Shown in pieces: positions 23,403 to 62,125 of a DNA stretch of 64,000 nucleotides (the stretch's first letter is position 1; each line of letters starts with the position of its first letter). The position numbers were made by a program, and so were the translations under genes. The stretch is from Macrostomum hystrix. Its lineage: Eukaryota; Animalia; Platyhelminthes. The notes below the pieces were generated by a model. It was not told the DNA's origin and searched no databases. It worked only from the letters and a program-made list of their open reading frames with translations. The stretch spans positions 1,798,001-1,862,000 of the forward strand of contig CATNEN010000032.1 in the NCBI GenBank assembly GCA_950097015.1. Direction: 5' to 3'.

Positions 23403-26400
23403 ATGGAGGGCGCCGGACCGGGCGGTCGGCTTCAAAAATTTCTGCGCCGTTTCACGACCGCTCCATCAAGTCTGTTTGGCCAGGTGAGACGAAAATCGGC
23501 TGCAGTGCTGGGCGGACACCTGGCGGACGAGGCCAGTCAGATGGAGTTGACGCTGTACGCCAGGCGGCCGCGGACTGTCAGTCTGGTCAGCCTGGTGCAG
23601 CGGACTCGGTTCAGCAGCCCGGAGCTCAAGGCAATTTATAGGCGATTCAAGACTGAGTGCCCCTATGGTAAGAAGCCGCGGATGAAGATTCTCTGGGTCA
23701 GAATGGCTAGGTGTCGGAAATGCTTCCTCCAGAAAACCTTCTCGTCGTTTCCTTTGACTCTCCTCTTTAATCTCTTGCTCACCAATCAGTTAATCAGTAC
23801 GTTTCACTGCACTTTAATTGCTTCGCTTTCTATCGTCCTCTTAGCCCATAGACTACGCATCCTGCCCGCCCCTTGTTAACTCAATCGTTGTCTATGTTCT
23901 TAATTCCGTGCTCGGTACAGTTCCCCTTTAGCTGCTTCTAGTGCGCACTAAGCCCACTAGATATTCGGACAAAATGCTTTTCACTTTCTAAATACAAGTT
24001 AAATACAAGCAAGGAAATTTTGTCCCAAGCGACAAATTGGTAGCAGAGCGCACTAAAATATCCACACAGCCAAGTCGAAAATGAAGACGCGCAGCACAAC
24101 CTCGACTCGTGGAAAGCTCGGTCACAAATCTCAAAACCGAGTAAGACCAACAACATACGCTAACCCGACTGCCAGCGGCCTCGCCGCACCTGCTAGCGGC
24201 CTCGCCGCATCTGCCAGCGGCCTCGCCGCATCTGCCAGCGGCCTCGCCGCACCTGCTAGCGGCCTCGCCGCACCTGCTAGCGGCCTCGCCGCATCTGCCA
24301 GCGTCCTCGCCGCATCTGCCAGCGGCCTCGCCGCACCTGCTAGCGGCCTCGCCGCATCTGCCAGCGGCCTCGCCGCATCTGCCAGCGGCCTCGCCGCACC
24401 TACCAGCGGCCTCGCCGCACCCACCAGCGGCCTCGCCACACCTACCAGCGGCCTCGCCGCACCTACCAGCGGCCTCGCCGCATCTGCCAGCGGCCTCGCC
24501 ACACCTACCAGCGGCCTCGCCGCACCTACCAGCGGCCTCGCCGCATCTGCCAGCGGCCTCGCCGCACCTACCAGCGGCCTCGCCGCACCTGCTAGCGGCC
24601 TCGCCGCACCTGCTAGCGGCCTCGCCGCACCTACCAGCGGCCTCGCCGCACCTGCTAGCGGCCTCGCCGCACCTACAAGCGGCCTCGCCGCAGCCACCAG
24701 CGGCCTCACCGCACCTACCAGCGGCCTCGCCGCACCTACCAGCGGCCTCGCCGCACCTGCCAGCTCAGTCGGCTCCATTGCATTCGGTGTATCTAACCAA
24801 CAGGACGCTGTACAACAACTTATTGGCGCAATGGCTCAGATGATGCAGCAGAACCAGCTGCTCGTACAACAGCTTCAAATAAACCAGACCACATCCCAGC
24901 CCGCCCCTCCGACGCCTCGACCGGCGTCCCTCTTCGGCGAAACCGTCCTCCGCAATGTCCAACTTCAAGGTTTCGACGGTGAAGACCCAGCTAGTTTCCC
25001 TGCATTTTGGAGTTCCTTCACTTACCGCATCGACAGCAGCAACTACACAGACGTTGATAAATTTGAAGCTCTTCGCGGGCTTCTCGCTGGCGCTGCCCTC
25101 CGGAAACTAGGTGGTCTGGACGCCTGTCAACCGGGGGCCTACAACCAAGCCTGCCAAATTCTCCAAGCTAATTATGGCGACCTGTGGGAGCAGAAGAGCA
25201 CCTGCTTCAGGCGACTTCTCGCGATGCCGCAGCTTTGCAACATCGACCACCAGAGCTTGGAGGAATTTTCAGACACACTTCGCCTCACAGTCGGCCAGCT
25301 AACCCGCCTCGGTGAAACCAGTGCCGCCCTGGATCCCTACGTGCATGCACTCTGGCCAAAGCTTCCACGGGCGCTCCAATCAGATATCCAGGATGTGCGT
25401 TGTAAGGCGTTGCAACCGCTAATTCCAACAATGCAAGAGCTCCAAGGACACCTCGACAACAAGCTTCGAGCCATCCGTGCCTCGCAAGCCAACTACACAT
25501 CAGCTGGTTTCGCCCCCTATGCCGGAGCTAGTCTAATCAACGCTGCCACAAACCGCTCCGTAACTTCATCCACTCCTAGTGCTGGTCACGTACACACTCG
25601 TGCACATGTACCGATCTGCGTCTACTGCGAACGGTCAGGACACTCCAGTCAGACATGCGGCGTAATCTCGAAGCCCGATGATCGGCTCCGCATTATTCGG
25701 AGTAAGGCCCTGTGCCTCAACTGCCTGCGTAGCCATGCCACCTCAAACTGTAGCTCCCGGAACAGATGCCGCGAGTGTCGAGCCCTGCACCACACATCAC
25801 TTCACGGAGCGCGTTTCAATCCGCCACCGCATGTTCTTCACGTCGACTCAACAGCGAAAGCCAACAGCAACCTCGACTCGACGGCCGCATTGCCGACGGC
25901 ATTCGCCAACTTAAAAGCCATGAACAATAACACCTTCAATACCGTCTCCTGCATCTCCTCCACCTGCGACGAGTTGATAAGGCCGTCCATCATGGCCACA
26001 TTCTCTGCCACTGCTGTAAACCCGACTAGCGGCGGCACTACGCGAGTGTCGGTCCTCATCGATGGCGGCTCCAGTTTCACGTACATAAAACTCGAGGTGG
26101 CTCGAAAACTCGGTCTTCGTTTACATCGCCGAATCTCGCTTGACAGCTCTTCATGTCACACCGACTCTCGTCGACGAGTGACCGCAGACATCGTCGAACT
26201 CGAACTCTCTACACCCGATGGCCGCCGTTTACCACTCCGAGTTCTGGCAACCGAGCACATCGCTCCACCAATCCACATACCAGCTGTCCAGCTACCAAGC
26301 GACATTCTGGCCACTCTGCAACACTTGCCCCATGGAATAGCCAATCTCCCACCTTCCCAAGACGGGGAACTTGAGTTAGATTTGCTCATCGGTAACGACT

Positions 26401-29400
26401 ATGCTCAGCGGTTAATAGGCCCGAGCGTTCCTGCAATCCCACTGCGGCAAAGTCTGACCGCGCACCTCACCCCGTTTGGTGCCGTCCTCACAGGCTGCCT
26501 CGAAAATACCGACGACTGTAGACCCAGTGGGCTTCTCAACTCTAGTCAACTCATCGCCAACTCACTGCTGTCACAATCACGTCGCGACAACCTTGAATGT
26601 CTGGCCGACCGAATGACCAGCCTCGAGCTGCTCGGCATCGAAAGAGGGGCCGAACAACCCAATCCACGAGGCGACGTTTTGACGAAAGACCTCTTGGACT
26701 CAGCCACACGTGGATCGGACGGTCGTTACTCGGTCGCATTACCCTTCAAGCCTGGAGCGGAGCAACTCCAATCAAACTTCGGACAAGCTTGGGGTCGCGC
26801 TCAGGCTACACACCGTCGTCTTTCACAGGCGGAACGTCAAGAGTACTATGGAGAGTTCGAAAAGCACAAAGCAGAAGGGATCCTGGAAATCGCCGATGAC
26901 ACTAGTCCAAAAGGAAAGATCATCCATGTCCTGCCGCACTTTCCCGTCATCAAAATGTCATCAAAATTTCATCCACATGGGAAGTGGCCATCCCAGACAA
27001 CACCCACACCCACGGACTCCACGATCCTCCAAGGCATCCCACCAGCCCAGAAAAAGGCCAAGAAGACATGCGCTTTCCTGTCTGCATCGAACAGATGCGT
27101 CCCCCCCGCAGGCATGGACATCAACCGCTTCGGCAAACTCAGTGCCCTTCTCGGAACTCTCGCATATGTTATACGTTTCGTCAAGCGAAGAAACCAAGTT
27201 ACCGCGCCAGATGCCTCGGAACGCCAGGCTGCTCTTCACTTGTGGATCAAATGGGTACAGAGAGAGCGCTACGCTGACGCAATCAATGCCATACAGGAAG
27301 GCAGACCAAAAAGCTGCAAGATAGTCGCACAGCTTGACCTCTTCTTGGATGACGAAGGTCTGATCCGCCACAATTCCCGCATGGCAAACGCAACCTTAGA
27401 CGCAGACGCAATCTACCCAATGCTCCTTCCACCCGATCATCATCTCACTCACCTGCTCATACTCTACATCCACAAACGAGATTACCACAGCAGTGCCATA
27501 TCTGTTCTACGGAGCCTTCACGACCGTTTCTGGATTGTCCGTGGTCTCTCCACTGTCCGCTCGAGCCTCCGCCAGCGTCTTCCATGCCGCTTCACGAAGG
27601 GCCGCACACTCCCTCCCCCACAGCACGGCCAGCTACCACCAGAGCGCCTCAACTCATCAGGCCAGTCGTTCAGCTCTCTGCTCGTCGACCAGCTGGGCCC
27701 CGTCTTGACGACCGATACGAAGACCCACACTAACAACAAACGAGGGGCAATGCTCCTCTGTTGCGCCTCAAGCCGCGCGGTCCACCTCGATTACCTCCAT
27801 GTCTATTCTGCGGACTCAGTTCTCCATGCTTTCGAGCGATTCTGGGCCCGCCGGGGACTCACCGAAGCCAGCATCTTCCTAGACCAGGCAACCGCCTTCC
27901 AAGCGGCCGGCAAAATCATCGACTCTCTGCTAACACCAACGTTCCAGCACAAACTCCTAGCTGACCTCCAGCCATTCGCCACTGCTAGACAACTCCACTT
28001 CAAATTCGCACCGGCACGCGCTCCGTGGCACCAAGGAGCCGTCGAGCGACTGGTAGGGATGGTCAAAGCCAGCCTTCGACCCTCACTTTGGCGCCGGCGG
28101 ATCTCGGACGAAGAGTTCCTCACCCTGCTGACAAAGATCGAGGCTGTCTTGAACTCTCGCCCGCTGACATCCTTCTCGAATGACCCTAACGATACGCGCC
28201 CCCTAACGCCAGCCGATCTCATCGCTCCTAGCGCTCGACTTGACTTGCCTGCAGCGCCTGAGCACCTTGTTCCATCTGCTGGGACCACGACCAGCGACCA
28301 ACTACGAGCTCTCTATCGACGCCACGAGCAAATCATTGACTCTTTCTGGGCTCGATGGAACCGCGACTACCTTCATCAACTCCACTCGATCCACTTACAA
28401 CACCGTAGACGGCACGGCGAGCACTCACACCAGCCCCTCGTTGGACAGCTCTACCTCCTCGCCGACCAGACTCCGCGGTCAAACTGGAAGACGTGCCGCG
28501 TCATCGAAGTCCATCCCGACAGTCATGACATCACCCGTTATGTCACTGTCCGAACGAGCACCGGTCACGAGTCCCGCCGTGCCATCACACATCTCGTCCC
28601 TCTCGAGGCCGACATTATCGATTTCCAGACCGCGGCCAACGCCGGCGGGGCTCTAGTTCCACCCGGCTCTGGCAGCAAGGACGATCCGGTACAAACCAAC
28701 CGCGCTCGACGTGCCATGCGACGCTAACTTCTACGTGACTCTCTTTTCAACATTGCGTAACTTCGCCCCCCCCCACCCTGTCGGAAATGCTTCCTCCAGA
28801 AAACCTTCTCGTCGTTTCCTTTGACTCTCCTCTTTAATCTCTTGCTCACCAATCAGTTAATCAGTACGTTTCACTGCACTTTAATTGCTTCGCTTTCTAT
28901 CGTCCTCTTAGCCCATAGACTACGCATCCTGCCCGCCCCTTGTTAACTCAATCGTTGTCTATGTTCTTAATTCCGTGCTCGGTACAGTTCCCCTTTAGCT
29001 GCTTCTAGTGCGCACTAAGCCCACTAGATATTCGGACAAAATGCTTTTCACTTTCTAAATACAAGTTAAATACAAGCAAGGAAATTTTGTCCCAAGCGAC
29101 ACTAGGTCATACTGAGTCAGACTGGGTCAGACTGGGTCAGACTAGGTCAGACTGAGTCAGACTGGGTCAGTCTAGGTCAGACTGAGTCAGGCTAGGTCAG
29201 ACTGAGTCAGACTAGATCAGACTGGGTCAGGCTAGGTCAGACTGAGTCAGACTAGGTCAGACTGAGTCAGGCTAGGTCAGACTGAGTCAGGCTAGGTCAG
29301 ACTGAGTCAGGCTAGGTCAGACTGAGTCAGGCTAGGTCAGACTGAGTCAGGCTAGGTCAGACTGAGTCAGACTAGATCAGACTGGGTCAGGCTAGGTCAG

Positions 29401-35992: not shown

Positions 35993-37834
35993 CTAGACCG
36001 GGTGCAGCAGGTGCTCCGGTGGCAGGGACGCGAAGAACGGATGATGAAGTGCGGCTCTCAGTGCGATCCTCTCCTCGGGCTCAAACTCCAGCATCCGCTG
36101 CATCAGGTCCAGTAGGTTGCGCGAGTCCGCCGTCTCGTCGCGCAGATGACGCTGCAGTGGCCGACAATTCTCGCGCACGAAGCGGCCTTCGGCGCCGTGC
36201 TGGTCAAAGTCAAGCCGGCCGTGCCGGAACAGACCAGAGCGCGATGCCCGGCTCATGCGGTAGGGCACGTGACCCAAAATTCGCTCCATCATGGCTAGGT
36301 GCTCCCGGTCTTCGTGCGTCTGGAACAGAGTGAAGCCCGTGTACAACTCGAATAGGATGCAGCCGATGGACCAGACGTCGCACGGCTGCGACCAACCGAT
36401 GTCGAGGATGACCTCCGGGGCTCTGTAGTGCCGGGTTGACACCACACTAGAGTGATGCTCATGGTCAAAAGTTGCCGAGCCGAAGTCGATCAGCCGAATG
36501 TCGGTACGATCAAGCATTCTCTCGTCCTTCTTTCTGCGCGGATTGTAGAAGGTGGTGTAGCTGGACTTCACAAGTAAAATGTTCTCTGGCTTCAGGTCAG
36601 TGTGAGTCAGCTGGTTGGCGTGAAGGAAGGCCACCGAGTGGACCAGTTGGTAGCCGATGTGCCTCACGTGCTCAATCGGATAAGGTGCGAAGTCATTCTC
36701 TTTGAGAAAATCAAACACTGATTTGCCGAGCAGATCGAACACTAAGCAGGCGTGACCATAGAACTCAAACCAGCTCAACAGCCGGATGCACAGGTGCTTG
36801 CCATCGGGATCGTTCTCTTCCAGCTTTTTTAAGACATTTATTTCGAGCATAGCTGCTTCGCGATATTTGGCGACGTTCTTCACGATCTTCACCGCAACGC
36901 GGCTCTGACACAAGTCCTGCATGTCGATGCATTCAGTCACCTTGCCGAATGTGCCCTCGCCGAGGGTCCGAGCGATACGGTAGCGATCTTTCAACACGTC
37001 GCCAAACGCGTAGATTAGGTGACCGTCAGAGTCATCTCGGTACGGCGACTTCTCCTTGCAGAGAAGGCCGGCGCCACGGCGAACTCGCCTACGGGGCTCT
37101 GCTGCTTCTGCTGGCTCTGCCGGTGGGGCCGCCACAGATGTTGTCCAGCCGACATCCTCGTCATTTGGCGAGCGACGACGCCAATGCCTTCGTCGCTCCA
37201 GTCTCGCACTAACATCCTCTGTCGCTGCGGTCTGCTCATCCACACCGTTTCGTACCTCGACTGCTGCAGCATCCGAACTTTCTTGAGTTGTCGTCGTTGC
37301 GCCAGTTGCTTGCTCAATCGCAGCTCGTCGCCAAGATGGCGGCGACGATTTCGCCAGCGGCAGCGTCGGTGACCCGAGCTTCGCCGGCGATGAAGACGGC
37401 TTAGGCGATGGCTTATTCTGGGCTGGAAGCCTCGGAGGAGACTGCTCCTTCGGTGGCTGTTCGAGGTGGGCTTGTGTCGAAACTTGTCCGCCAGTACGAA
37501 GCGATGCAAGCTGCTGGCCTAGCTTCTCTAGATCGCTCCGCAGTTGTTCAAGCTGACTTTTACGACAGTGCCGGCTGACTGGCGCAGCTGGCCGTGGTAC
37601 AGCCACTGCGACAGCAGCTGGTGACTGTGGTGGCTCTGGTTCAGGATCCTTGAAGGTGAGCGGAATCGCGACGTCTGTTCGGGCCCCGTGGTAGCCTCTG
37701 ACCTGGCGAGCTCTGCGGCGAGTGTGCGCCTGCTGGGCCGACGATGCTTGCGGCGCTGCGTCCTGCGTCATTTTGGTCCGCACTTGTTTTTCGAACTTTC
37801 CGTCGGAGATCGAAGCTAAGCCTTGTACCAGCAT
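35993..37834 (-). CDS. CLK2: CDC-like dual-specificity (LAMMER) kinase, coding region uninterrupted by introns
   Basis: DDSDGHLIY, LGEGTFGKV, VAVKIVK, HTDLKPENILL, DFGSATF, STRHYRAPEVIL and the signature EHLAMMERILG. In-frame stop upstream of ATG 37834. Confidence 0.96.
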   Translation of the reverse strand: MLVQGLASISDGKFEKQVRTKMTQDAAPQASSAQQAHTRRRARQVRGYHGARTDVAIPLTFKDPEPEPPQSPAAVAVAVPRPAAPVSRHCRKSQLEQLRSDLEKLGQQLASLRTGGQVSTQAHLEQPPKEQSPPRLPAQNKPSPKPSSSPAKLGSPTLPLAKSSPPSWRRAAIEQATGATTTTQESSDAAAVEVRNGVDEQTAATEDVSARLERRRHWRRRSPNDEDVGWTTSVAAPPAEPAEAAEPRRRVRRGAGLLCKEKSPYRDDSDGHLIYAFGDVLKDRYRIARTLGEGTFGKVTECIDMQDLCQSRVAVKIVKNVAKYREAAMLEINVLKKLEENDPDGKHLCIRLLSWFEFYGHACLVFDLLGKSVFDFLKENDFAPYPIEHVRHIGYQLVHSVAFLHANQLTHTDLKPENILLVKSSYTTFYNPRRKKDERMLDRTDIRLIDFGSATFDHEHHSSVVSTRHYRAPEVILDIGWSQPCDVWSIGCILFELYTGFTLFQTHEDREHLAMMERILGHVPYRMSRASRSGLFRHGRLDFDQHGAEGRFVRENCRPLQRHLRDETADSRNLLDLMQRMLEFEPEERIALRAALHHPFFASLPPEHLLHPV

Positions 37835-39761
37835 CAAAGCTTGGTGCGGAACCTCTTGCCTGATCTCTCTCTCTTATCAAGCGCTGGTTGCCCAATGGTA
37901 CGCGTTCCTATCCCTCATCTACGAATGTGCGGCGCGCAAGTCTGCGCTGTGCTGCGGTCTGCCGTGCGTGCAACCGGGAGCGGGAAGCGAACAAAAGACC
38001 CGCTTCGAATCCCTGGCCCAGTAACAGCTTCCAATGGCTTAGTGCATTTCAATGAGTCATTTTGCGGCTCCATCTGGGCGAATGTCGAAACTTCCTTGCC
38101 TATTTCTTCTTCCCCGGAACCTTCCATCCCATACTTGGCCGGTGTGCACCCTCCCACTGGCTTCCATTCCTCTAGAGAGGAATTGGATTCGCGGAAAATG
38201 TCACAGCCGGATGCGAGGTAAGTATGGGAAGTGCAGACAGGCGGCAGCCGCGCCTCTATTCAGATCCGCAAGTGAAACCGTGCGCCAGCGAGCTTTGGTC
38301 CACTTCTGCCATGTTCTGCAAAATCAAGATAGACCGACAGGGGGTTTTAAATTAATATAAAATAAAAGAACACACTTCAGAAAGTTTAGCCAGCTCTGCG
38401 CAGCAGAAGTTTCAATTTCTAGCGATCCGAATTAAATCAGAAAATCGCTTTGAAAACGCTCAATGCGAAAGCACTGAATTGTGACGACTCATCACGCGGA
38501 TGCATCTGATCAGACTTGAAGATCTGACTTCCAATCGGCGGAGATCTACTGAAAGGAAGTGTTTGAAGCGACCAAAACTCTGGGATTTGTGAACAATGCC
38601 TGCAGATCCTGGCTGCATGTGATGGTTGGGGCGGCTGCAACCAGTGATTAAAAAAGCCCCCCCAAACCTGTCATTGTTCTCAGCTCTTCAGCGGAGCAGC
38701 AGCAGCTGTCACCAAGTCACGATTTGGACTGAACTGGAGCCCGACTGCCATAATTTCCGTTGTCTACTATTGTTTTCCTCATTCTCTCCCCACCTCTCCT
38801 GTCTCTCTCATCTCGACTCAATCTTCCTGAAGCTGAAGCTCTCCCTCCTCTCTATGCTGCGTAAATTTTTGTGGGCTTTTGGTTCGTCCTTTCGCTATTT
38901 TTCCGAAAGATGAAGATTAAATGGAAATGGACATGGCTCCAATATCTCGCTCTATCTTTTACCGTCGGCGCCTGAAAAAAGGAGCGCTCGTGCTCAAATT
39001 CGACTCTCAGCGGCTCAATCGTTCTTGTTACATGGCCTGCAGCCCCACCTCGAGCTCTCTCGCACCTTTCCGAGAATGAAACCGCAGAGAAATAATTGAA
39101 GGAAGCCCCGAGTCAAACGCGAAACCTCCGAGAGCAGTTGATTGCTGACAAGAAAAATTCGCAACTAAATTGGGAATCCAGTTAAAAGTAATCAGTATTA
39201 CCTGAAACTATATCAGATGCTACCTTGTGTGCTCGCAGCTTGAAATTCAGAGTAGCTCGTATTACATTTTTACATAGAAATTCTTTTTGTTCTTGTCGAC
39301 CTTGTAGATCTTTGTAGTACTCGGTGACGTCTTTATACATGCACTTTGATACAATAATATCAGAGTTCTGAAAGTAGAGTAGTCGATATTTCAATTAATA
39401 ATAGATTACAGCTAACAAAAAATTGAAGACATTATTAAGACAAAGCCTCGAGTTTCTGCCTTAAAATGTGAGTGAGTAGGACACGCGAAAGTTTTAAAAC
39501 TTGGAAACGCTCGTAGTTCAACTTTTTTGCTAATAAATTTGGAGCATTTAAGTTACATCGTGCCACAGCTGACAGTTCTGAGACTGTGCTGAAAGTTATT
39601 GTTGGAGGAAAATCGCAAACGCTTGATGAGCACAATGACTTCCTAGTCTTGTTGGCTGCATTTTCTCTTTCTACACTCTGTGTTACGTTTCTGCTTGCTT
39701 TTCTGTCTCTCTACTGAGCTTGACATCGACATGGCAACCAGAAAACTGACAGCAATGGCAG

Positions 39762-44625: not shown

Positions 44626-47600
44626 ATGAGTCTTAAGCTGGACGATAGTCCGTTTCACCATTGCCGCCTGTGCACCAAGGCCTACTCATCTGAGAAGAGT
44701 CTAAACAAGCACCTGAGAAAGAAGCACCACGCTCACAGCCTAGTTGGCAGAGCCAGTCCGGTGCTGAACCTGGCCGACTCCGCCTCCTCGGACGATCACC
44801 GACTGATGACCGTGTCAAAAGGTGACATCCTGACTCTAGCCGTGCCAGTTGTGCCCTCCGTTAGCAGCCGAGCTTCGCTGGATGACATCATCATTGTCTG
44901 CCCAGAATGCGGCGGCACCATCAAGAGCAAGAAAGGTGTCGCCAAGCACTACATGTGCTTCCACAATGCCGTATACACCGCCTGGAAGTCCGGCTGGTTT
45001 GGTCGCAGTGTTCGCCTAATGGACCTGACCCGGGAGATGATTCGGGAGTTTCACGCCTCAGAAGACGTTTCATGCGGCACCGGCTTGGTAGCAAAGGAGT
45101 CGAAGGACCCGAATGTCGTGGAGGCTGCCACGGATGAGCCAGACGCCGCTGACACCGGCCTAGTTCTGGACTGTAGTGTAGACGAGGCGGAAGACGATTC
45201 TACAAATCTGTCGGGCCGTTCAGGCAGCGAGCTGCTGCGCTTCCCGACAAAGCTGCAGTTGCCGGAGCCGAGTCACAAGGCTCCGCCGAGTGTTGGACTT
45301 GTCGCCCAGCGACCGGTTAAGCGATCCAAGCTGAAGACACAACTGGCAACCACGGCGCCATTCTTCATCACCAAGAATGGCCAGCTAGAGTTTAACAGCA
45401 ACGAGAATCCGCTCGACATCAACTGTCCATTCTGCATCACGCACAAGACCACAATCAAGGGCCTAGCCAAGCACTGCGTCAATCATCACCCAGACGAGTA
45501 TGCCGGCTGGAAGAATGGCAAGTTTGGCAGCGTTCAGCTGCGCTACGTCCGACCAGACGCTGGCATGGTGAACCAGATCCTCGGCGAGTTCCAGCAGCCA
45601 ACTAAGCAGGTGGCTGAAGCGGCTGGCACAAAAGAAAATGAACAAACTGTATACGGCGACGATACTGCAGCTGGAAACTCCGGCTCGGCCAGTTCAACTT
45701 CGCCACCTCTGCAGTCCTCGACATCACCATCTACGGAAGCAGTCGGCAGCGGAAACCGGGGGTTGACAGGAGCCACCATCGGTGCACCCACCTCTGCTGC
45801 CACCACAGTCGCTGTTGCAGCTGCAGCTGCTGCCGCAGCCGCAAACCTTAGTATGTTCGACGACGAAAAGCAGGCTACGCCGTGTCCATTCTGCGGCGAG
45901 CTAATCTTCTCCAAGGGCATGGGCAAGCATTGCATCTACTTCCACCATGATCAGTACCAGGAGTGGAAGGCCGGCAAATTCGGTATTGTGCCGCTGCGAT
46001 TTGTTCCTAGCCAGCTTGGTTTAAGCGGCGATGGCAAGGAGCTATCAGAGCGGGCGCTAAAGCGACGTGAGGCTCGCAAGAAAAACGGAATTAGTATCAC
46101 TTTGCCGCTGACGGAGACTGCCGGTTCGGCCCTTGGCGCGTCCGCAGCGGCAGCGACGTCTCCAGCGGAGGCAGCGACACCCGATGCATCTTCAGTAAAC
46201 GTCACTATGCGCATCAAGCCGAGCATCTTCCGCGGCGAGGTTTACCGTTGTGGCGAGTGCGATCGCGTATTCGAAAAGTCCAGCAGTCTCAGCCAGCATC
46301 TGCGCATCCACAAATACGGCCCTTCGATGTCCAAGCTGGGCTTCCAGCTGCATACTCCAGACGAAGCTGCTAATGATTCAGCTGAGAATATTGACGACGA
46401 GGACGATGATAGTGGTGTGTTCGTCTGCCACTGCTGCGAAGCAGCGTTTGACTCTGCAGACGAGCTGAAGCGACACCTGATTGAGCGACACCGGGACACT
46501 GACGAACCTTTGCCACCGAGCGAGGAAGAGACCGAAGAGATCGACCGCTCCGTGCGCTTTATGTGCCACCTGTGCCACAAGCTGCATCTTACGCGCCGTA
46601 GTCTGATCGGACACATCCGTACTCACCGAGCCGCGGCCAGTCTGTCTGACGATGAGAATACTTCAGCCATAGCCGCGAGAGAGCCAGGCGAGCTGTCACC
46701 GGAAGCGTCACCCTCGTCATCACCATCCTCGATGTCGCAGATGTCCCAGAACCGACCTGACCGGCACTTCTGCAGCGTCTGTCAGTCGTGCTTTCCGTCG
46801 GCACGCAGCCTAGCGCAGCACAATCGTGTACACAAGTTTGGAACTCCCATGAAATCCCAGAACGGATCGGCCGCAGTAATTTGTGACGATGACGCCGAAG
46901 ATGATAACGTCAGCGAGGATTTGTCTCGCGATGGCCGTCTACAGATTTCCGACGCTGCTTCTTTCCTCGATGCAGCCTCAATTAAAGCGTCGTGCCCAAA
47001 GTGCGGTAAGGCCTTTCGCGACAAGTTCTTTCTGCGCGACCACCTCGGCCGCTGCTTCGCCGAGGCGCTGGCCGATGGCGAGCTCGAGATGAGCGACCTG
47101 GCCTCCATGGCTGGTGTGCCATTGGTTGGTTCGAAGTCTGTGAGTCCTTATGGCCGCGCAGCCTGTCTTTTTTACGAATTCTTTAGTCGAATGGCGGGGG
47201 ATTTCATTTTGATTATTCTGAATTTCACTCTCCAGTATTTTTCTAAAAATGTGTTATTTATGAGTAGTATTTTACGTATGTTGCGTGTTTAAACATGTTT
47301 TTTATTCATAGCTACTTTTTAACTAGGCAGATTAGTGAATTGTGTCACCGAAGTCCATTATGGATGTGGGCATTCGATACAAACATAGCGTACAAAATTC
47401 ACTCATGAACTTCTGAATCCTGGCTAAACTCATCAAAACCAGACGAAACCTGAACTGCTCTCAGTCAATCATTGTCTATGGGCTAAAGTTAGGAGTGTAA
47501 TAACGCTAAAATGATGGACAAAACTGGACGATTCTAATTACCGTCCTTCACATTTCACCATTCATCATAACTGGCAGTTATCTGGGAAAACAAAAAAATT

Positions 47601-48270
47601 AATATGAAGAAATCCAAATCCATTAACGCCATGAGACTAGGCGCTGCACCAAAGGTAAATTTACATAGTTTTACAAACTTATAGGCAAAATATCATAATT
47701 CGAATGTAAAAACAGAGTACAACTCGGGAGAATCACTCGGAAAAACCGCACCGAATTCAGGACTCAGCCGAGGAGCAGCAGTCAGCGCCAGTCCTCGCCT
47801 TCAAGTGTCCCGACTGCGACAAGGCGTTCAGCACTCAGGCCAATCTCGCCAAGCACAGCATTGTTCACAGCTCCAATTCTGTTAGCTGCAACCTGTGCCA
47901 CCGAGAGTTTCGCATGCCCTGTCATTTGGCTAGACATTTTTGCGACGAAAAACTGCAGCAACAGCAGCAGCAGCAGCTGATCTCAAGTTTAGAGGTCACA
48001 GCTACCCAGGCTGCTAATAATAGGCATCGCTGCGAACTGTGCAATCAGGTTTTTCAATACGCCGAGAATCTGACAGTGCATCGCCGGTTTTGTCAGCAAC
48101 ACGGCAGAAACTCCGCCGACGCCGAGTCAGACGATGATGCATCGGCTGGCCAGATGCTGCTGCTCGACTGCGAGGACGAGGAGCACGAGTGCTCGATGTG
48201 CAACGAGACTTTCAGTGATCGGGCTTCGTTAGATAGTCACGTGGTTAGCTGCAGTCTAAATCGGTTTAGT

Positions 48271-48301
<31 letters not shown>

Positions 48302-51300
48302 CGTCATCATCTACCGCAAGGTATGATTTATATATTGTTATTTCGATTTCAATTGACAATTTTTACAAAAAGTTCCTAATATTCTCACATTAAAATATTT
48401 TTCATTTGTTTATCTGACGTTTATTGGTTCATAAATAACGACAAATTTCATTGTGTTTAATCTATAACATAACCGGGCTAGTCTGGGCCATAATTTAACT
48501 TTAGTGCATAATCTTCGTATATTACGAACGAAGCATTTTAAAATGTATGAAATAGGATTGTAATCGATTAAATTATTTGGTTTTCCTCAAATATGACGAC
48601 CTTTTGCCGGCTCAGAATGGTATTAAAAAAATATAAGCTACATATTGATCAGCACTCAAGCACTTTCAAAGGTTCCATTTGTTCGATAAATATCTTGTCT
48701 ATGGCTTGAACTGCATGGAGCCCTCTCAAGGAACGCATCGGCTTATACTTTTACCAGTCACTGCTGCGCAAGGCAGAGATTTTCAGTAATCTCTCTCTGA
48801 TGCCTGTATAGTACCGAGTCTGGGCTGCGCTAAGCAAGAAAACTAGTCTATGGTTGAAAGTGAAGAATAACTGAAGGCTCTTCGAGCTCTTCTTTCTAGT
48901 CGAAGATCCGAACAATTTTTTTGGTAGCCACAGTTAGAAAAATTTAGCGACATGGAGGAACAAAAAGAGATTCTTGATTTAGAAGGCGTCAATGATAGTG
49001 AGCGGCTGTTGCGTATTTCCAAGTTCTCTGCTCCAACGCTGCGCAAAGTGAACAGTAATTGGAATAAATTTCTGGTCTGGCTCGAGGGCCGCAAGCGAGT
49101 CCGCTCCGACACTGACCACGATGCATTCTTCAAGGAAATGAATGAATGGAATAAGTCAGACTGGGACTTTACTCTTCAAGGCTTTGTGACTGCGGTGCGG
49201 AAGCCGAGCGGAGACCGCTATCCGCCCGCCACTATCAAGGGCTTCGTTACTTGCATTCAGTTTAGGCTGCAGAAATTTCACAACAAAAGCTGGTCTTTTT
49301 TAACTGACCCGGAGTTCTTTAGGACCCGACAGTGTCTCATCGATGCTATGAGAATCTCCAGCCAGGAAGGCCTTCCCGTTGCTCAAAAGAGAACGCGCAC
49401 AATCGGCTTAGCCGAAGAGGAGAGGCTCTGGCGGGATGGTAAATTTGGCATGTCAGACCCCGAGCAGTTGGTCAGCACTCTAATATATTACCTTGGCCTG
49501 CACTTGTCATTGCGATCATGCCAGGAGCAGCGAAACTTGCTATTCGGCAGGGACTCCCAGCTGCGGCTAGTTTGCGATGACGAAATGCGCGAGAATCTTA
49601 TTTACACTGAGCGAAAAGTGACCAATAGTCCTCAGTCGACGACGGAGCCGCGGACTATTAAGATCTACCCGCATGACAATCGCGACAGGTGCATTGTGGC
49701 CATGTACAAGACCTACGTGTCTCACAGACCGGAGAGCTTCGGACTGAAAGGTCACGAAGCATTTTATCTTTCGCCGCTCAAAACTCCGCCAAGCGCCTTG
49801 TGGTACCGCTGCCAACCCATGGGTGTGCACACCATTGAGTCCGTTGTCAAGAAGCTGCTGGCGTCGGGTTCTGGCGAAGGCCGCGTCTATAGCTTTGAAA
49901 CGTGAGACGTAACACTTACCTTTACGAGTAGACTCAGGAACTGTCTACAGCTCTCGGTATACAGTCTCTCAAGGCCACTGATGGCATAGCAAAATAATTT
50001 TACACTGTGTCAAATTAATTATTAAAAATGTGAGTACACACTACTCAAACATGTTCTAAGTACTAAGCAAGGACTGTTAATATAAAATCCACAGGAAGGG
50101 TCCTGCTGCCCCAACTGATATGCGACCTCTACAACAGCCGGGACAGCCGCAGCATCCGCGGATTTCTGGCCCACCAGAGCGCGAACGTGTCCTTTGTCCG
50201 AACTGCGGCAAGACCTACTGTCGCAAGGATGTTCTGGAGGCTCACCTTAGGACCAGCTGTCGCGGGGTTAAAGCTGCGGCAGCGGCAGCTCAATCAGCTG
50301 ACCAGCCTGCAGCTAAAGTGGCCCGCCTGGATCTCAACCACCATCTGGCCTTCCGTTGCGAACTCTGTCCGTCGCAGTTCTCATCATCCCTTGGCCTTGT
50401 TGTACACCGATCCAAGTGTCACCCGCAATTCTACGGACCGACTCATCGGCGCGCTATGGCTGCTGCGGCGGCGGCTGCTTCTGCTGCCTCCACTTCCGCT
50501 TCTACAGTTGCTCCCTCAGCTGTTGGCACCTTGGCCACAGCCGCAGCACCTTCTCAGACGCCTTCAGCTGATCAGGGCCCACTGCTGTCTCTGCCGCACC
50601 GCTGCTCGCAGTGTCCGCGCGCCTTTCTCACAGTCGGCCGGCTCAAGGAACACCTCAGCAGCGTGCACGCCGATGCTGCACTGGCCGCTGTTGGAAATGG
50701 CATCGCTGTGAATGCTGAGGACACCGACGGAGACAACGATGACGTCATGGGTGGACTTGTTCTAGATGACGCGGTGAAAGATAAGGATGAGTCACCGGCT
50801 GGTGACGCTCAGTGGCTGAATGTTGAAGAAGAAGCACATGTAGTCGGCAATGTCGACTTTGTGGACAGCATGAACAGCGCTGAGGTGAGAATTCCGTTTG
50901 GTGATTCAATTTCTGGGCAGCTAATTTCTGGTATCCGGGACCCTTTGTGCGAAAGCCAGACGTGCCACATCTTCTTATCTACTGTGTTCATTAAATATTT
51001 GATGCAATAACATTTGAGCAACCTTTCTTCCTTCTCCAATTAAACCAGTATCCAGAGGCCGACGTCTACCTGTGCTCAGAATGCGGCGGGTCCTACCAAA
51101 CCTTTGACCTGCTCAATCGTCACTTAATGGAGTTGCACGAGATCGACTCTGTGACACCGGAGCCGCCTTCGGTTGGTGGCTTAAACTCTTGCAATTTTTA
51201 CTTTTCTTGTTTTTTGTTTTACCAATCTAAAAAGGGGTAATTTTAAGACATTTCAGTTACTTATTTTCATATAACAAATTTAACAGGTAAAATTAAGCGA

Positions 51301-51406
51301 CACTGTGCAGCAGTCTCACGAGCCACTTCTTTACCCGTCTACGGCGTCGTCAGTTCTGCCGACCGGAGCCCGGAAGCGAAAATCTGTTCCGATGTCAATG
51401 AATTAA
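44626..51406 (+). CDS. Multi-zinc-finger protein (~17 C2H2/C2HC fingers) with an internal DUF3504 domain, ~1686 aa; exons 44626-47139, 47761-48320, 48948-49901, 50095-50884, 51049-51171, 51287-51406
   Basis: Kozak ccgccATG. All five introns are GT-AG with compatible phases (0,2,2,0,0). Fingers include CGECDRVFEKSSSLSQHLRIH, CPDCDKAFSTQANLAKHSIVH and CSECGGSYQTFDLLNRHLMELH. C-terminal RKRK. The last junction and an alternative acceptor at 47716 are less certain. Confidence 0.85.
48948..49901 (+). CDS. Crypton/tyrosine-recombinase-derived DUF3504 domain exon (ZMYM/QRICH1/KCTD1-type fold)
   Basis: VRKPSGDRYPP, EEERLWRDGKFG..DPEQL, LSLRSCQEQRNL, YTER, DRCIV.MYKTY...RP, FYLSP...WY..QPMGVHTI..VVK follow the Crypton-family pattern in order; the HxxR...H...Y box is missing. 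Confidence 0.88.
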
Positions 51407-52286
51407 GATTTAATGGAATTGCTGGGCCAGACATTTATAGTCTTCGCTTTTTAAACTGCAGCAAAATTGTGTTTCCAGTTTCAATAAGTAAAATTAGTTG
51501 TCGCTCAATTACTAGGCCTTTTAGAAACAGGATTGCCAAATCAGCGAATCTACTATATTTTGTGAACTTTCTACTTAACCCAAAATGTACATCTGTTGCA
51601 AGATGATTGGCTGAGCCGCTACCTATCTTTGTACCCCCTATGTCCGTTCTTAACCTCTGCGAGACACGCACCTCCCCTTGCCCCATGATCTGAATGATGC
51701 TATAAATAGACCAATGGACTGACTGTTTAAATAAAGTATATAATGCTTTCATTCAAGAAATGTGAATAAGTAATTCACTGTGTTGTAAGTCTGTCATGAT
51801 TGTTGCAGCTTATCAATACTTCTATAATAGCATTCTTGTTGCATTGTTCAATCCCATTAATTACTTAAAACTTTATTTAAGAATTGTTTCATAATTCTGT
51901 TTTTTGTTATCCTTAACATGATCGACTTTTGACAGCATACTTTTGGTTGGGCTTAATTAATGAAATTATTTTCATTTTTAACAACAAGCTTTGTTATACT
52001 CTCAGTCTCAACACTAAACCTGTTTTTACTGCTTTTGTTTTATTGTTTTGATGTCACAGTTGTTCTAATTCTAGATTAGTAATTATCTACAAGGGACGAC
52101 CTACCCGCCTGTTTGAGAGCATTTTAATTCTTCGTATCGCTCTAAGCATGACTTTGTTGTTGATGCAAATCAAAAAAAAAATACTGACAGAAATATATAC
52201 GGCGTTGCACGTTATCTAGCATTCGTTAATGTTTTGACTTGTATAAGCATTCGACTTGCTTGCTATTCAAACGCATTCAACGCTCA

Positions 52287-60318: not shown

Positions 60319-62125
60319 TTATAGCTCGTCCTTGGTTTCTTTCTTGTCAGCCTCGTCCTTCTCCTCCTTCTTGTCGGCCTCCTCCTTCTTCTTGGCCTCC
60401 TCCTCAGCCTTCTTCTTGTCCTCCTCCTCTTTGCGCTTCTTCTCCTCCTCTTCGGCCTTCTTTCTGTCCTCCTCGTCCTGTTTGTCCTTCATCTTCTTCT
60501 CTCCCTCGACTGTCTTCTTGAAGGTCTCCTCGGCGTAGGCCTTGGCCTCGGCCGGGTCGTTGCCAACGAAGACATTGTCGAAGATGGAGCCCGATTTCAC
60601 CTGCCACAAATCGAAGCCGATGGCACCAATGTCGGAGTACTTGTACAGCTCGCTATCTGGGGAATAATCCGGGTTGTCAATCTCCGGGTGCACCCATTTG
60701 CCCTTGTAGGCCGGGTTGTCAATCTGCTTTGGCTTCCAGTCGCCCTTGTAATCTGGATTGTCAACCATCGGCGGCTCCCATTCGCCATCCATCTCGTCGT
60801 CCCAATCATCAGGCTTCTTGGCTTTGGGATCCGGGATGGTCTTGGGCTTGTCCCAGTCCTCCGGCTTCGTGTCAGTGGGGTCGTCGATCTTCTCGCGCTC
60901 GTCCCAGTCGTCAGGCTTCTTGGCAGCCGGGTCCTTGATCTTCTTAGCCGGCAGGAAGTCCCAGTCGGCCTCTAGCTCGCCGCCCTCGGCCCGCTCGTTG
61001 TCAATGAGCACCTCGTAGGTATTGTCCGGCTTCACAATCAGTGTGTACAGATGGGTCAGCTCGTCGTCTTTGCAGCGAATCTCCTTCTTGGTGAGTAGAT
61101 TTTTGCCCTTGTAGTTGAAGATGACATGCACCTTCTTGGTACCAGGTCCACAGATGTCTGGACCAAACATGATCTTGTAGGGTGTGTCGCCATGGAAGTT
61201 CTTTTGGTCGACATCGCTGCCAAGGACCTTGACATAGCCGCCGCCACAGTCAATGTTCTGCTCGTGCTTCACCTGGAACTGGATGACCAGTGGCTTTCCA
61301 GCATTGGAGAAAGGCGAGTTGAACTTAGCACTAATACCATAGAACTTGGCATCCTGCGAGGTCTTGATACCCTTGTCCTTCTCAGCATCATTGTAGAACT
61401 TCCCAGCAGTCCATTCCCACTTGCCCTGGTCGCTGCCTTTGTAGGTAGACTCTACCCAGCGATCTTTCCATGATGCTGAAATGCAGATTGCAGAAGAACG
61501 AATGTTAAGTAAGATAAAGCTATTAAAACATTTTATTTCAATTTTTATAATAATTAGCTACATATGAAGTTATTTATAGCTACATGTGATTGCCTGTTAA
61601 CTAATTAAATAATAGGGGGGGCCTATATATATAGGATTTTATATAATTATACTTAGGCATAATAATGAAAATTATTACAAAACTAGCTACCTTGCATGTA
61701 GCCTAGTTCACAATGTTTTAGGCCAGGGAAAAACTATATTAAATATTACTCTATAGCTAGCTAGTTTTGATTTAAACCACTGCATACTCTATAAAAAGGA
61801 GAATTGTATTACATCTGTATTCTATTCATAAATGTAGGCCCTAACTTAAGACTTAGAGGGTTGGCTTACAATTGATTTTAAGCATGTAGTCCAGTTGGGA
61901 AAATAATTAGCTAGCTAAAACATGTTATAAAAAGCTATTAGGAACTTCAAATTACATGCAGAAAAATTGGTCAGGTTGATTCCAGGTTTTGTTGCGAAGT
62001 AAATAATGTAAGTCAAGACTTATGTTCGATTCAAGCGACTTACCATCCAAAAACTCTTCCTTGAAGAAGACTTCACCGCAGGCAAAAGCAAGCAGTGCAA
62101 ATGCCAGAAAGCTCGAAAACCACAT
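60319..62125 (-). CDS. CALR: Calreticulin, 412 aa; exons 62125-62044 and 61475-60319
   Basis: Signal peptide MWFSSFLAFALLAFACG; phase-1 intron; KHEQNIDCGGGYVK; IMFGPDICG; P-domain repeats (KPEDWD, GEWEPPMVDNPDYKG); acidic tail ending KDEL*. Confidence 0.98.

What the first reader, a model, noticed from the sequence alone, without database searches (positions are those of the whole stretch)
48948..49901. Crypton recombinase domain captured as one symmetric cassette exon inside a ~17-finger zinc-finger protein
Seen: a 954-bp (318-codon) exon flanked by phase-2 introns on both sides (GCAAG|gtatga...tttag|C GAC ATG and GAAAC|gtgaga...cacag|G AAG GGT), so it joins in frame to zinc-finger exons on each side. 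Skipping it keeps the frame. Failing to use its donor gives ACG TGA, a shorter protein ending in this domain. Established: the motifs follow the DUF3504 family, derived from Crypton tyrosine-recombinase transposons and domesticated in ZMYM2/3/4-Woc, QRICH1, KCTD1 and KIAA1958; those hosts carry MYM fingers, Q-rich or BTB regions, not long C2H2 arrays. The exon stops just before the HxxR...H...Y catalytic box, so it should be non-catalytic. Inference: an independent, possibly lineage-specific Crypton domestication that yields a transcription factor with up to three splice-switchable architectures (ZnF only, ZnF-DUF3504-ZnF, ZnF-DUF3504-stop).
Basis: partly seen in the sequence, partly recalled or inferred. 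Interest (0 to 1): 0.85.

Follow-up and report, generated by a model that had tools for sequence, protein, structure and literature searches.

The report
Recombinase-derived exon joined to zinc fingers
A flatworm zinc-finger gene has picked up, inside one intron, a disabled copy of a jumping-gene enzyme, and this copy is transcribed and spliced onto the gene's last four zinc fingers; it is a young example of a known way in which animals turn transposon proteins into gene regulators.

Summary
The 317-codon ORF at 48952-49905 is real and is a Crypton-type tyrosine-recombinase remnant: Pfam DUF3504, E 7e-26, with a confident Cre/QRICH1-like fold. It ends before the HxxR...H...Y box and has also lost the hairpin lysine, so it is non-catalytic.

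RNA contigs confirm the donor junction 49901>50095, in frame into the last zinc-finger exons. They also confirm the skipping junction 48320>50095. They do not show the proposed acceptor at 48948. In three runs the contigs run 19-40 nt further upstream, and that stretch has stops in all three frames. The RNA seen therefore encodes a 660-aa protein that starts at the ORF's own ATG (DUF3504 plus 4 fingers), beside a 1381-aa, 17-finger protein. It does not encode a finger-DUF3504-finger cassette.

The orthologous Macrostomum lignano intron is 99 nt, has the same phase and is empty, so the insertion is lineage-specific. The nearest relative is a standalone 444-aa protein at about 60% identity. ZMYM, QRICH1 and KIAA1958 are only 17-21% identical.

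This is closest to KCTD1 isoform b: a new member of a known kind, moderately interesting. The scan holds notes on other Crypton-like ORFs elsewhere in this genome, not on this locus. Function is inferred, not shown.

The parts
44626..47139 (+). Host gene, large coding exon (fingers 1-9). The first ATG matches the start of the M. lignano orthologue.
   Evidence: ORF. Donor 47139>47761 in RNA run X4. 63-64% identical to M. lignano A0A1I8H9T4 and its locus L008.
47534..47654 (+). Alternative 5' exon spliced to 47761. It shows that this gene uses internal starts.
   Evidence: Junction 47652/4>47759/61 in runs X1, X2 and X3. The contigs begin at 47534-47582.
47761..48320 (+). Host exon with fingers 10-13. 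It ends in a CAG repeat and a phase-2 donor.
   Evidence: RNA contigs, Pfam C2H2 hits, finger count.
48321..50094 (+). Expanded intron of 1774 nt. It is the counterpart of a 99-nt phase-2 intron in M. lignano and is removed whole in the finger-only isoform.
   Evidence: Skip junction as a loose end at 50093 in X3 and X4, whose letters equal 48289-48318. M. lignano intron at L008 13577-13675 with the same AG|G phase.
48908..48951 (+). Transcribed leader of the captured exon. It has stops in all three frames and no ATG. The true 5' end lies between about 48864 and 48908.
   Evidence: Contigs start at 48908 (X3) and 48929 (X2), with zero depth in 48273-48863. Sequence read.
48952..49901 (+). Captured Crypton-type ORF: a SAM-like N-domain plus DUF3504, 317 codons with the ancestral start codon. 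The donor lies at 49901|GT, and the unspliced stop TGA is at 49903-49905.
   Evidence: Pfam PF12012 E 6.9e-26 and weak PF25561. AlphaFold2 pLDDT 89.8. Foldseek hits to QRICH1 9hjt_H and Cre. Sister to P0155 in the tree, 100/100 support.
49902..50094 (+). 193-nt intron between the captured exon and the next host exon.
   Evidence: Junction 49901>50095, GT..AG, in X2 contig 9 of 1737 nt. The depth in bin 49849-50045 is accounted for by its exon part.
50095..50884 (+). Host exon with fingers 14-16. It is shared by both isoforms.
   Evidence: RNA contigs and junction 50882/4>51047/9 in X2-X4. Pfam C2H2 hits.
51049..51171 (+). Host exon with finger 17.
   Evidence: Junctions in X1-X4. Finger at residue 1628 of the full model.
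51287..51406 (+). Last coding exon. The stop TAA is at 51404-51406. The 3' UTR runs to about 51720-51826, with AATAAA at 51730.

Best explanation
An intronless copy of a Crypton-type tyrosine-recombinase-like gene landed in a short, old phase-2 intron. That intron lies between fingers 13 and 14 of a conserved 17-finger C2H2 gene of a Macrostomum-type flatworm. The copy kept its own start codon and the SAM-like plus DUF3504 part of the fold. It lost the last third of the catalytic domain (second Arg, His, Tyr) and the hairpin lysine, so it cannot cut DNA.

A GT that overlaps its last codons now acts as a donor and joins the ORF in frame to the host's last three coding exons. The locus therefore makes two products. 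One is the original 1381-aa, 17-finger protein, in which the whole insertion is spliced out as an intron. The other is a 660-aa protein made of the recombinase remnant followed by the four C-terminal fingers. The second most likely comes from a transcription start just upstream of the captured ORF.

Shown: the identity and truncation of the domain, both junctions, the 5' leader with stops in every frame, and the empty orthologous intron.

Inferred: that the exon has its own promoter, that the 660-aa protein is made, and that the remnant serves as a protein- or DNA-contact module. Such a module could modify or compete with the long isoform at sites read by the shared four fingers.
For: Domain.
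Truncation and loss of the conserved Lys (K224T plus a 4-residue hairpin deletion).
No C-terminal module anywhere in the window.
RNA: 49901>50095 in X2; 48320>50095 in X3 and X4; contigs from 48908/48929 with zero depth in the rest of both introns.
Stops in all frames in 48908-48951 and an open 660-aa frame from ATG 48952 to TAA 51406.
Start codon: the standalone relative P0155 also starts MEE, with the same first 10 bases, and has its own 5' UTR, stop and 3' UTR.
Depths: downstream exons are about equal to upstream exon plus captured exon in each run (8.4+6.1 vs 13.5; 12.9+~6.5 vs 19.1; 17.9+~6.8 vs 26). This fits separate transcripts.
Another internal 5' exon exists at 47534-47654.
The orthologous M. 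lignano intron is 99 nt, has the same phase and is empty. No M. lignano relative carries PF12012.
The ORF is intact and keeps 91-93% of family-conserved positions. Its GC3 of 0.62 is like the host exons, while intron GC is 0.34-0.37.
Against: The 5' end is not mapped. Logan contigs have no direction and drop rare forms, and only one reads call was allowed.

The junction 49901>50095 rests on one contig in one run.

The depth arithmetic could equally reflect 3' bias.

An AG with a good pyrimidine tract at 48899 could be a cis- or trans-splice acceptor rather than a start site.

There is no protein evidence and no second species with the insertion. The captured copy's branch is 3.3 times longer than that of its sister (0.82 vs 0.25), which could mean relaxed constraint. 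dS against the nearest relative is saturated (pS 0.80), so selection on this lineage is untested.
Confidence: 0.6

Rival explanations
1. One reading: a true cassette exon that uses the acceptor at 48948. It would give a 1699-aa protein with the domain between finger 13 and finger 14, at least as a minor isoform.
For: The phases fit on both sides and the joined frame is open. The acceptor sequence resembles the other weak acceptors of this gene. Contigs drop rare variants.
Against: No contig in four runs shows 48320>48948. Three runs show colinear RNA running 19-40 nt past it. Downstream depth exceeds upstream depth by about the depth of the captured exon.
Confidence: 0.15
2. Neutral exonisation. 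A decaying transposon or retrocopy remnant is transcribed and happens to splice into the host gene, but the product has no function.
For: The insertion is absent from the M. lignano orthologue. Its branch is 3.3 times longer than its sister's. It loses some family-conserved residues. Two of three variants seen within the exon are non-synonymous. No orthologous fusion was found in protein searches.
Against: The ORF is 317 codons long without a stop, in an AT-rich intron full of stops. It keeps 91-93% of conserved positions and gives a confident fold. It ends at the same module boundary as ZMYM, QRICH1 and KIAA1958. It is expressed in all four runs at roughly a third to a half of the host level, and its codon GC3 matches the host exons.
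Confidence: 0.2
3. Poison exon. Host transcripts splice 48320>48900, using the AG after the pyrimidine tract. They hit TAG at 48925 and yield a truncated 13-finger protein or are degraded, and the DUF3504 ORF is not translated.
For: A good pyrimidine tract and an AG lie at 48899, 9 nt upstream of the longest contig's start. The frame from that acceptor stops at 48925.
Against: No contig bridges 48320 to 48900 in any run, although the equivalent bridge to 50095 was assembled in two runs. The depth arithmetic argues for separate transcripts.
Confidence: 0.05

Closest known systems
KCTD1 isoform b (vertebrates; Kojima & Jurka 2011, PMC3212892)
   Same: A Crypton ORF confined to a single exon supplies an N-terminal DUF3504 to an alternative transcript of a host transcription-regulator gene. 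A shorter or older isoform lacks it. Here too there is a single exon with its own ATG, an in-frame splice into host exons, and a host isoform without it.
   Different: The KCTD1 insertion lies upstream of the gene, the partner is a BTB domain, and the event is more than 500 My old and conserved. Here the insertion lies inside an internal intron and the partner is four C2H2 fingers. It is absent from M. lignano, and its conservation is unknown.
Crypton-derived YR ORF in an intron of ATF7IP (birds; PMC3212892)
   Same: An intact Crypton-type ORF sits in an intron of a transcription-regulator gene, and splicing into the host was predicted.
   Different: For ATF7IP no fusion mRNA was known and the catalytic residues were kept. 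Here the fusion junction is seen in RNA and the catalytic box is deleted.
ZMYM2/3/4-WOC, QRICH1, KIAA1958 (DUF3504 proteins)
   Same: The fold and the module boundary are the same. These proteins end 16-20 residues after the point where the window exon ends (ZMYM3 within one residue of the end of its alignment), and they too lack the Tyr box. QRICH1 is the best solved-structure match (9hjt_H).
   Different: Identity is only 17-21%. Their partners are MYM fingers, a Q-rich/CARD region or none, and their DUF3504 is C-terminal. They are ancient, and this exon is not an orthologue of any of them.
Standalone ~430-aa DUF3504 ORFs of the 'N-S/T-S-L-R-R' clade (P0155, P0002-P0010, P0175-P0199)
   Same: These are the nearest relatives, at 36-61% identity. 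They have the same N-domain plus DUF3504, are intronless, and the closest one starts MEE.
   Different: They are free-standing and keep the C-terminal module with the second Arg and the Tyr, while the His of HxxR is Ser or Thr. The window copy is cut off before that module and is fused to fingers.

Membership tests
DUF3504 / Crypton-derived tyrosine-recombinase-like domain (PF12012) | Match to the Pfam model above its gathering score | tested here: met
   91.7 bits against a cut-off of 29.7, E 6.9e-26, covering profile positions 3-161 of 162.
DUF3504 / Crypton-derived tyrosine-recombinase-like domain (PF12012) | Two-domain tyrosine-recombinase fold | tested here: met
   AlphaFold2 pLDDT 89.8. 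Foldseek: QRICH1 9hjt_H at 1.2e-10 and Cre at 4e-6. KIAA1958, ZMYM and QRICH1 at 1e-11 to 2e-14.
DUF3504 / Crypton-derived tyrosine-recombinase-like domain (PF12012) | N-terminal SAM-like 'QRICH1 domain' (PF25561) | tested here: inconclusive
   22.8 bits, below the cut-off of 30.8. Two of the four nearest relatives scanned pass it (P0003, P0004), and the model is helical there.
Active Crypton transposon | Complete R-H-R-Y tetrad and hairpin Lys | tested here: not met
   The first Arg is present. The exon ends before HxxR, H and Y, and the conserved Lys is Thr.
Active Crypton transposon | Several near-identical copies, or recognisable element ends | tested here: not met
   There is a single copy in the window, no flanking repeats, and the flanks are unique within the window. 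The rest of the genome could not be searched.
ZMYM/WOC/QRICH1 clade | MYM-type fingers or a Q-rich/CARD partner, and grouping by sequence | tested here: not met
   The host exons give only C2H2 models. Identity to that clade is 17-21% against 36-61% to standalone ORFs. No joint tree could be built because no ZMYM sequences were available as tool objects.
KCTD1b-type capture (alternative 5' exon that carries DUF3504) | Single-exon domain with its own ATG, spliced in frame to host exons, and a host isoform without it | tested here: met
KCTD1b-type capture (alternative 5' exon that carries DUF3504) | Own transcription start | tested here: inconclusive
   Contigs begin at 48908-48929 and the rest of the intron has no coverage. 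The depths are additive. No 5'-end data are available.
KCTD1b-type capture (alternative 5' exon that carries DUF3504) | Conservation under purifying selection | not testable with these tools
   Only M. lignano was available and it lacks the insertion. dS against P0155 is saturated.
   It is absent from the contigs of four runs, and RNA runs colinear through 48948. Contigs can miss rare forms.

The most novel reading that the evidence does not exclude
The captured DUF3504 module works in cis on the four C2H2 fingers it is fused to. That would make it a covalent counterpart of the QRICH1-SEPHS1 'Zincore' complex, which locks zinc-finger factors such as ZFP91 onto DNA. On this reading the two transcription starts yield a 17-finger factor and a 4-finger 'self-locking' competitor for part of the same sites. 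It would also mean that binding finger-DNA complexes is a general, ancestral property of Crypton-derived DUF3504 domains, and so would explain why they are repeatedly recruited by transcription regulators.
Probability: 0.1. Interest if true: 0.7.

Novelty: new member of a known kind. Interest (0 to 1): 0.45.

Why it matters
All well-studied Crypton domestications (ZMYM/WOC, QRICH1, KCTD1b, KIAA1958) are hundreds of millions of years old, so their early steps are lost. Here the steps can still be read:
- an empty short intron in a sister lineage;
- an inserted ORF that keeps its ancestral start codon;
- a free-standing relative at about 60% identity;
- loss of exactly the part that the old domesticated genes also lack;
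- a new donor that ties the remnant to host zinc fingers.

The partner, a C2H2 array, has not been described with DUF3504 in the papers searched. It is notable because human QRICH1 acts in a complex that binds C2H2 factors on DNA. Macrostomum worms are amenable to RNAi and transgenesis, so isoform-specific tests are feasible.

Tried and rejected
1. A free intronic remnant unconnected to the host gene. Rejected because of the GT..AG junction 49901>50095.

2. Intron retention giving a 317-aa product or a fingers-DUF-stop product. The intron 49902-50094 has no depth beyond its exon share.

3. The C-terminal catalytic module hidden downstream or elsewhere. tblastn of four full-length relatives found nothing.

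4. Transposon ends or target duplications around the insertion. None found. The flanks are unique in the window and unlike the UTRs of P0155 or the M. lignano intron.

5. Fusions of C2H2 with DUF3504 among relatives. None were found among the long hits scanned or the precomputed domain lists.

6. Exact look-up of the 317-aa product in public assemblies. Not on record.

7. dN/dS against P0155. dS is saturated. The polymorphisms are too few to use.

8. The bacterial-type promoter scan of the intron is not meaningful for this organism.

Only one read-laying run was allowed, so raw-read junction counts and the 5' end could not be pursued.

Full report
**Observation.** The window holds an ORF at 48952-49905 (+) of 317 codons with its own ATG and a TGA stop. 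The upstream exon ends ...GCA AG|gt at 48320. The proposed acceptor gives AG+C at 48948. The exon ends AC|gtgaga at 49901, and the next exon starts G AAG GGT at 50095. Joining the exons gives open frames of 1699 aa with the exon and 1381 aa without it, with 13 C2H2-like fingers before it and 4 after. Exon GC is 0.51 and GC3 is 0.62. That resembles the host exons (GC3 0.53-0.65) and differs from the flanking intron pieces (GC 0.34-0.37).

**What the domain is.** Pfam gives DUF3504 (PF12012) at 91.7 bits, E 6.9e-26, over residues 152-303 and profile positions 3-161 of 162. There is also a sub-threshold QRICH1-domain hit on residues 58-131. The only solved-structure relative by sequence is QRICH1 (9hjt_H, E 1.6e-6).

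An AlphaFold2 model built on 62 aligned relatives is confident (pLDDT 89.8). Its best PDB matches are QRICH1 in the Zincore-ZFP91-DNA complex (1.2e-10) and then many Cre recombinase chains. In Swiss-Prot models the matches are KIAA1958 (2e-14) and ZMYM2/3/4 and QRICH1 (about 1e-11), all at only 17-21% identity.

**Catalytic residues.** Relatives with an intact recombinase signature (P0125, P0115, P0075, P0063) show LR...K...HSLR...GH...Y. The nearest clade shows N-S/T-S-L-R-R...TG-R/H...Y. The window exon keeps the first Arg, has Thr in place of the nearly invariant hairpin Lys plus a 4-residue deletion there, and stops before the whole HxxR/H/Y module. tblastn with four full-length relatives finds no remnant of that module anywhere in the 64 kb.

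The human domesticated proteins end 16-20 residues after the same point: ZMYM2 is aligned to residue 1359 of 1377, QRICH1 to 758 of 776, and KIAA1958 to 700 of 716. ZMYM3 is aligned to 1369 of 1370, with the window residues running to 312. The flatworm exon has thus been trimmed to the same module.

**RNA.** One reads call was allowed. Runs X2-X4 (organism B) and X1 (organism A) hold contigs 99% or more alike, with zero depth over the introns, so they are RNA.
- The junction 49901>50095 (GT..AG, skips 193) is present in X2. It lies in a 1737-nt contig that runs from inside the DUF3504 exon through the next exons.
- In X3 and X4 the downstream contig carries a 44-letter loose end before 50093. 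Its listed 30 letters match 48289-48318 exactly, which makes it the skip junction 48320>50095.
- The proposed acceptor at 48948 is not seen. Contigs lie colinear with the genome from 48908 (X3), 48929 (X2) and about 48928 (X4), and depth is zero from 48273 to 48863.
- Between 48908 and 48951 every frame has a stop (TAG at 48925, 48935 and 48945) and there is no ATG.

On the RNA seen, the upstream 13 fingers therefore cannot be translated into the domain. The ORF must start at ATG 48952 and runs open through the junction to TAA 51404-51406, giving 660 aa: DUF3504 plus four fingers.

Downstream depth roughly equals upstream depth plus captured-exon depth in each run (13.5 vs 8.4+6.1; 19.1 vs 12.9+~6.5; 26 vs 17.9+~6.8). 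This fits separate transcripts, although 3' bias could mimic it. A second internal 5' exon (47534-47654, spliced to 47761) shows that the gene does use internal starts. No retention of the intron at 49902 is seen.

**Host gene and orthologous site.** The large exon is 64% identical to Macrostomum lignano A0A1I8H9T4 (P0171, 1503 aa). That protein has C2H2 domains only, and it passes from finger 13 to finger 14 with no DUF3504. None of its cluster mates or paralogues carries PF12012.

The M. lignano genomic locus (L008, NIVC01001470.1) is syntenic, with a protein-kinase gene upstream on the opposite strand as in the window. At the homologous codon it has a 99-nt phase-2 intron (...GCT AG|gtaaga...cgcag|G AGC). 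There is no DUF3504 or P0155-like match in the 22 kb. The window's 1774-nt intron is therefore an old short intron that received the ORF in this lineage.

**Relatives.** An exhaustive profile-free search found 2105 relatives. The best representative is 44% identical, and nearly all are free-standing proteins of 300-460 aa. The few long ones are tandem DUF3504 copies without C2H2.

The closest relative is P0155, 444 aa, 57-61% identical depending on method. It comes from an RNA contig that has its own 5' UTR with stops, its own stop codon and a 3' UTR. It starts MEE with the same first ten bases as the window ORF. The window's ATG is therefore most likely the ancestral start.

In a maximum-likelihood tree the window exon and P0155 are sisters (100/100) inside the N-S/T-S-L-R-R clade. 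The window branch is 3.3 times the longer of the two (0.82 vs 0.25). The exon still keeps 91-93% of positions that are at least 80-90% conserved in the family. Against P0155, pN is 0.27 and pS is 0.80, which is saturated. Selection on this lineage is thus not measurable here.

**Mechanism.** The best-supported reading is a KCTD1b-like capture. The inserted ORF serves as an alternative 5' coding exon that is spliced onto the host's last three coding exons, while the host's own transcripts remove the whole insertion as an intron.

The function of the remnant is inferred from its kin: a non-catalytic protein- or DNA-contact module in transcription regulators (PMC3212892). [quoted passage not shown] 2025, as cited in PMC13538652). 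A DUF3504 module tied to C2H2 fingers is therefore a suggestive pairing, but nothing here tests it.

**Comparison and novelty.** Kojima and Jurka (PMC3212892) describe single-exon DUF3504 capture for KCTD1b and KIAA1958, and an intronic Crypton ORF in ATF7IP. The process is known. What is new here is the partner (a C2H2 array; no paper in the library combines the two as a fusion), the position inside an internal intron, the flatworm lineage, and the youth of the event, with both an empty orthologous site and a free-standing relative in hand. I rate it a new member of a known kind, interest 0.45.

**Limits.** There were no raw reads and no other Macrostomum genomes. The organism behind P0155 is unknown. 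The 5' end is unmapped, and the key junction comes from a single contig.

Noticed in passing
window 47534-47654: An alternative 5' exon of the zinc-finger gene is spliced to 47761 in runs X1-X3, while X4 shows 47139>47761. Its two ATGs are out of frame with the fingers, so that transcript would start translation further downstream.
   Followed up: partly
P0155, P0002-P0010, P0175-P0199 (alignment A4): A large clade of intronless ORFs of about 430 aa, many from marine metagenome contigs (for example Tara Oceans). They carry N-S/T-S-L-R-R in place of HxxR and often TGR in place of TGH, yet keep both Arg and the Tyr. Whether these are active non-canonical Cryptons or host genes is open.
   Followed up: partly
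L007:507-3379: Two DUF3504 ORFs lie side by side on one 3.6-kb genome contig (GCA_046766455.1). The first also hits Phage_integrase.
   Followed up: no
window 50712-50746: In runs X2-X4, contigs from some other transcript share only this 35-nt acidic-linker stretch and then run on with unlike sequence for 204-255 letters. They probably come from a paralogue.
   Followed up: no
window 35993-37837 (-) and L008:1719-3494 (-): A protein-kinase gene upstream of the zinc-finger gene is conserved in position and strand in M. lignano (up to 93% identity), which confirms synteny of the locus.
   Followed up: yes
window 60319-61272 (-): An exon-sized ORF with a strong Calreticulin-family match (E 5e-68).
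   Followed up: no
window 24081-28727 (+): A 1548-aa ORF that matches only DUF1759 and DUF5641 in Pfam, with no reverse-transcriptase hit at E<=1e-5.
   Followed up: no
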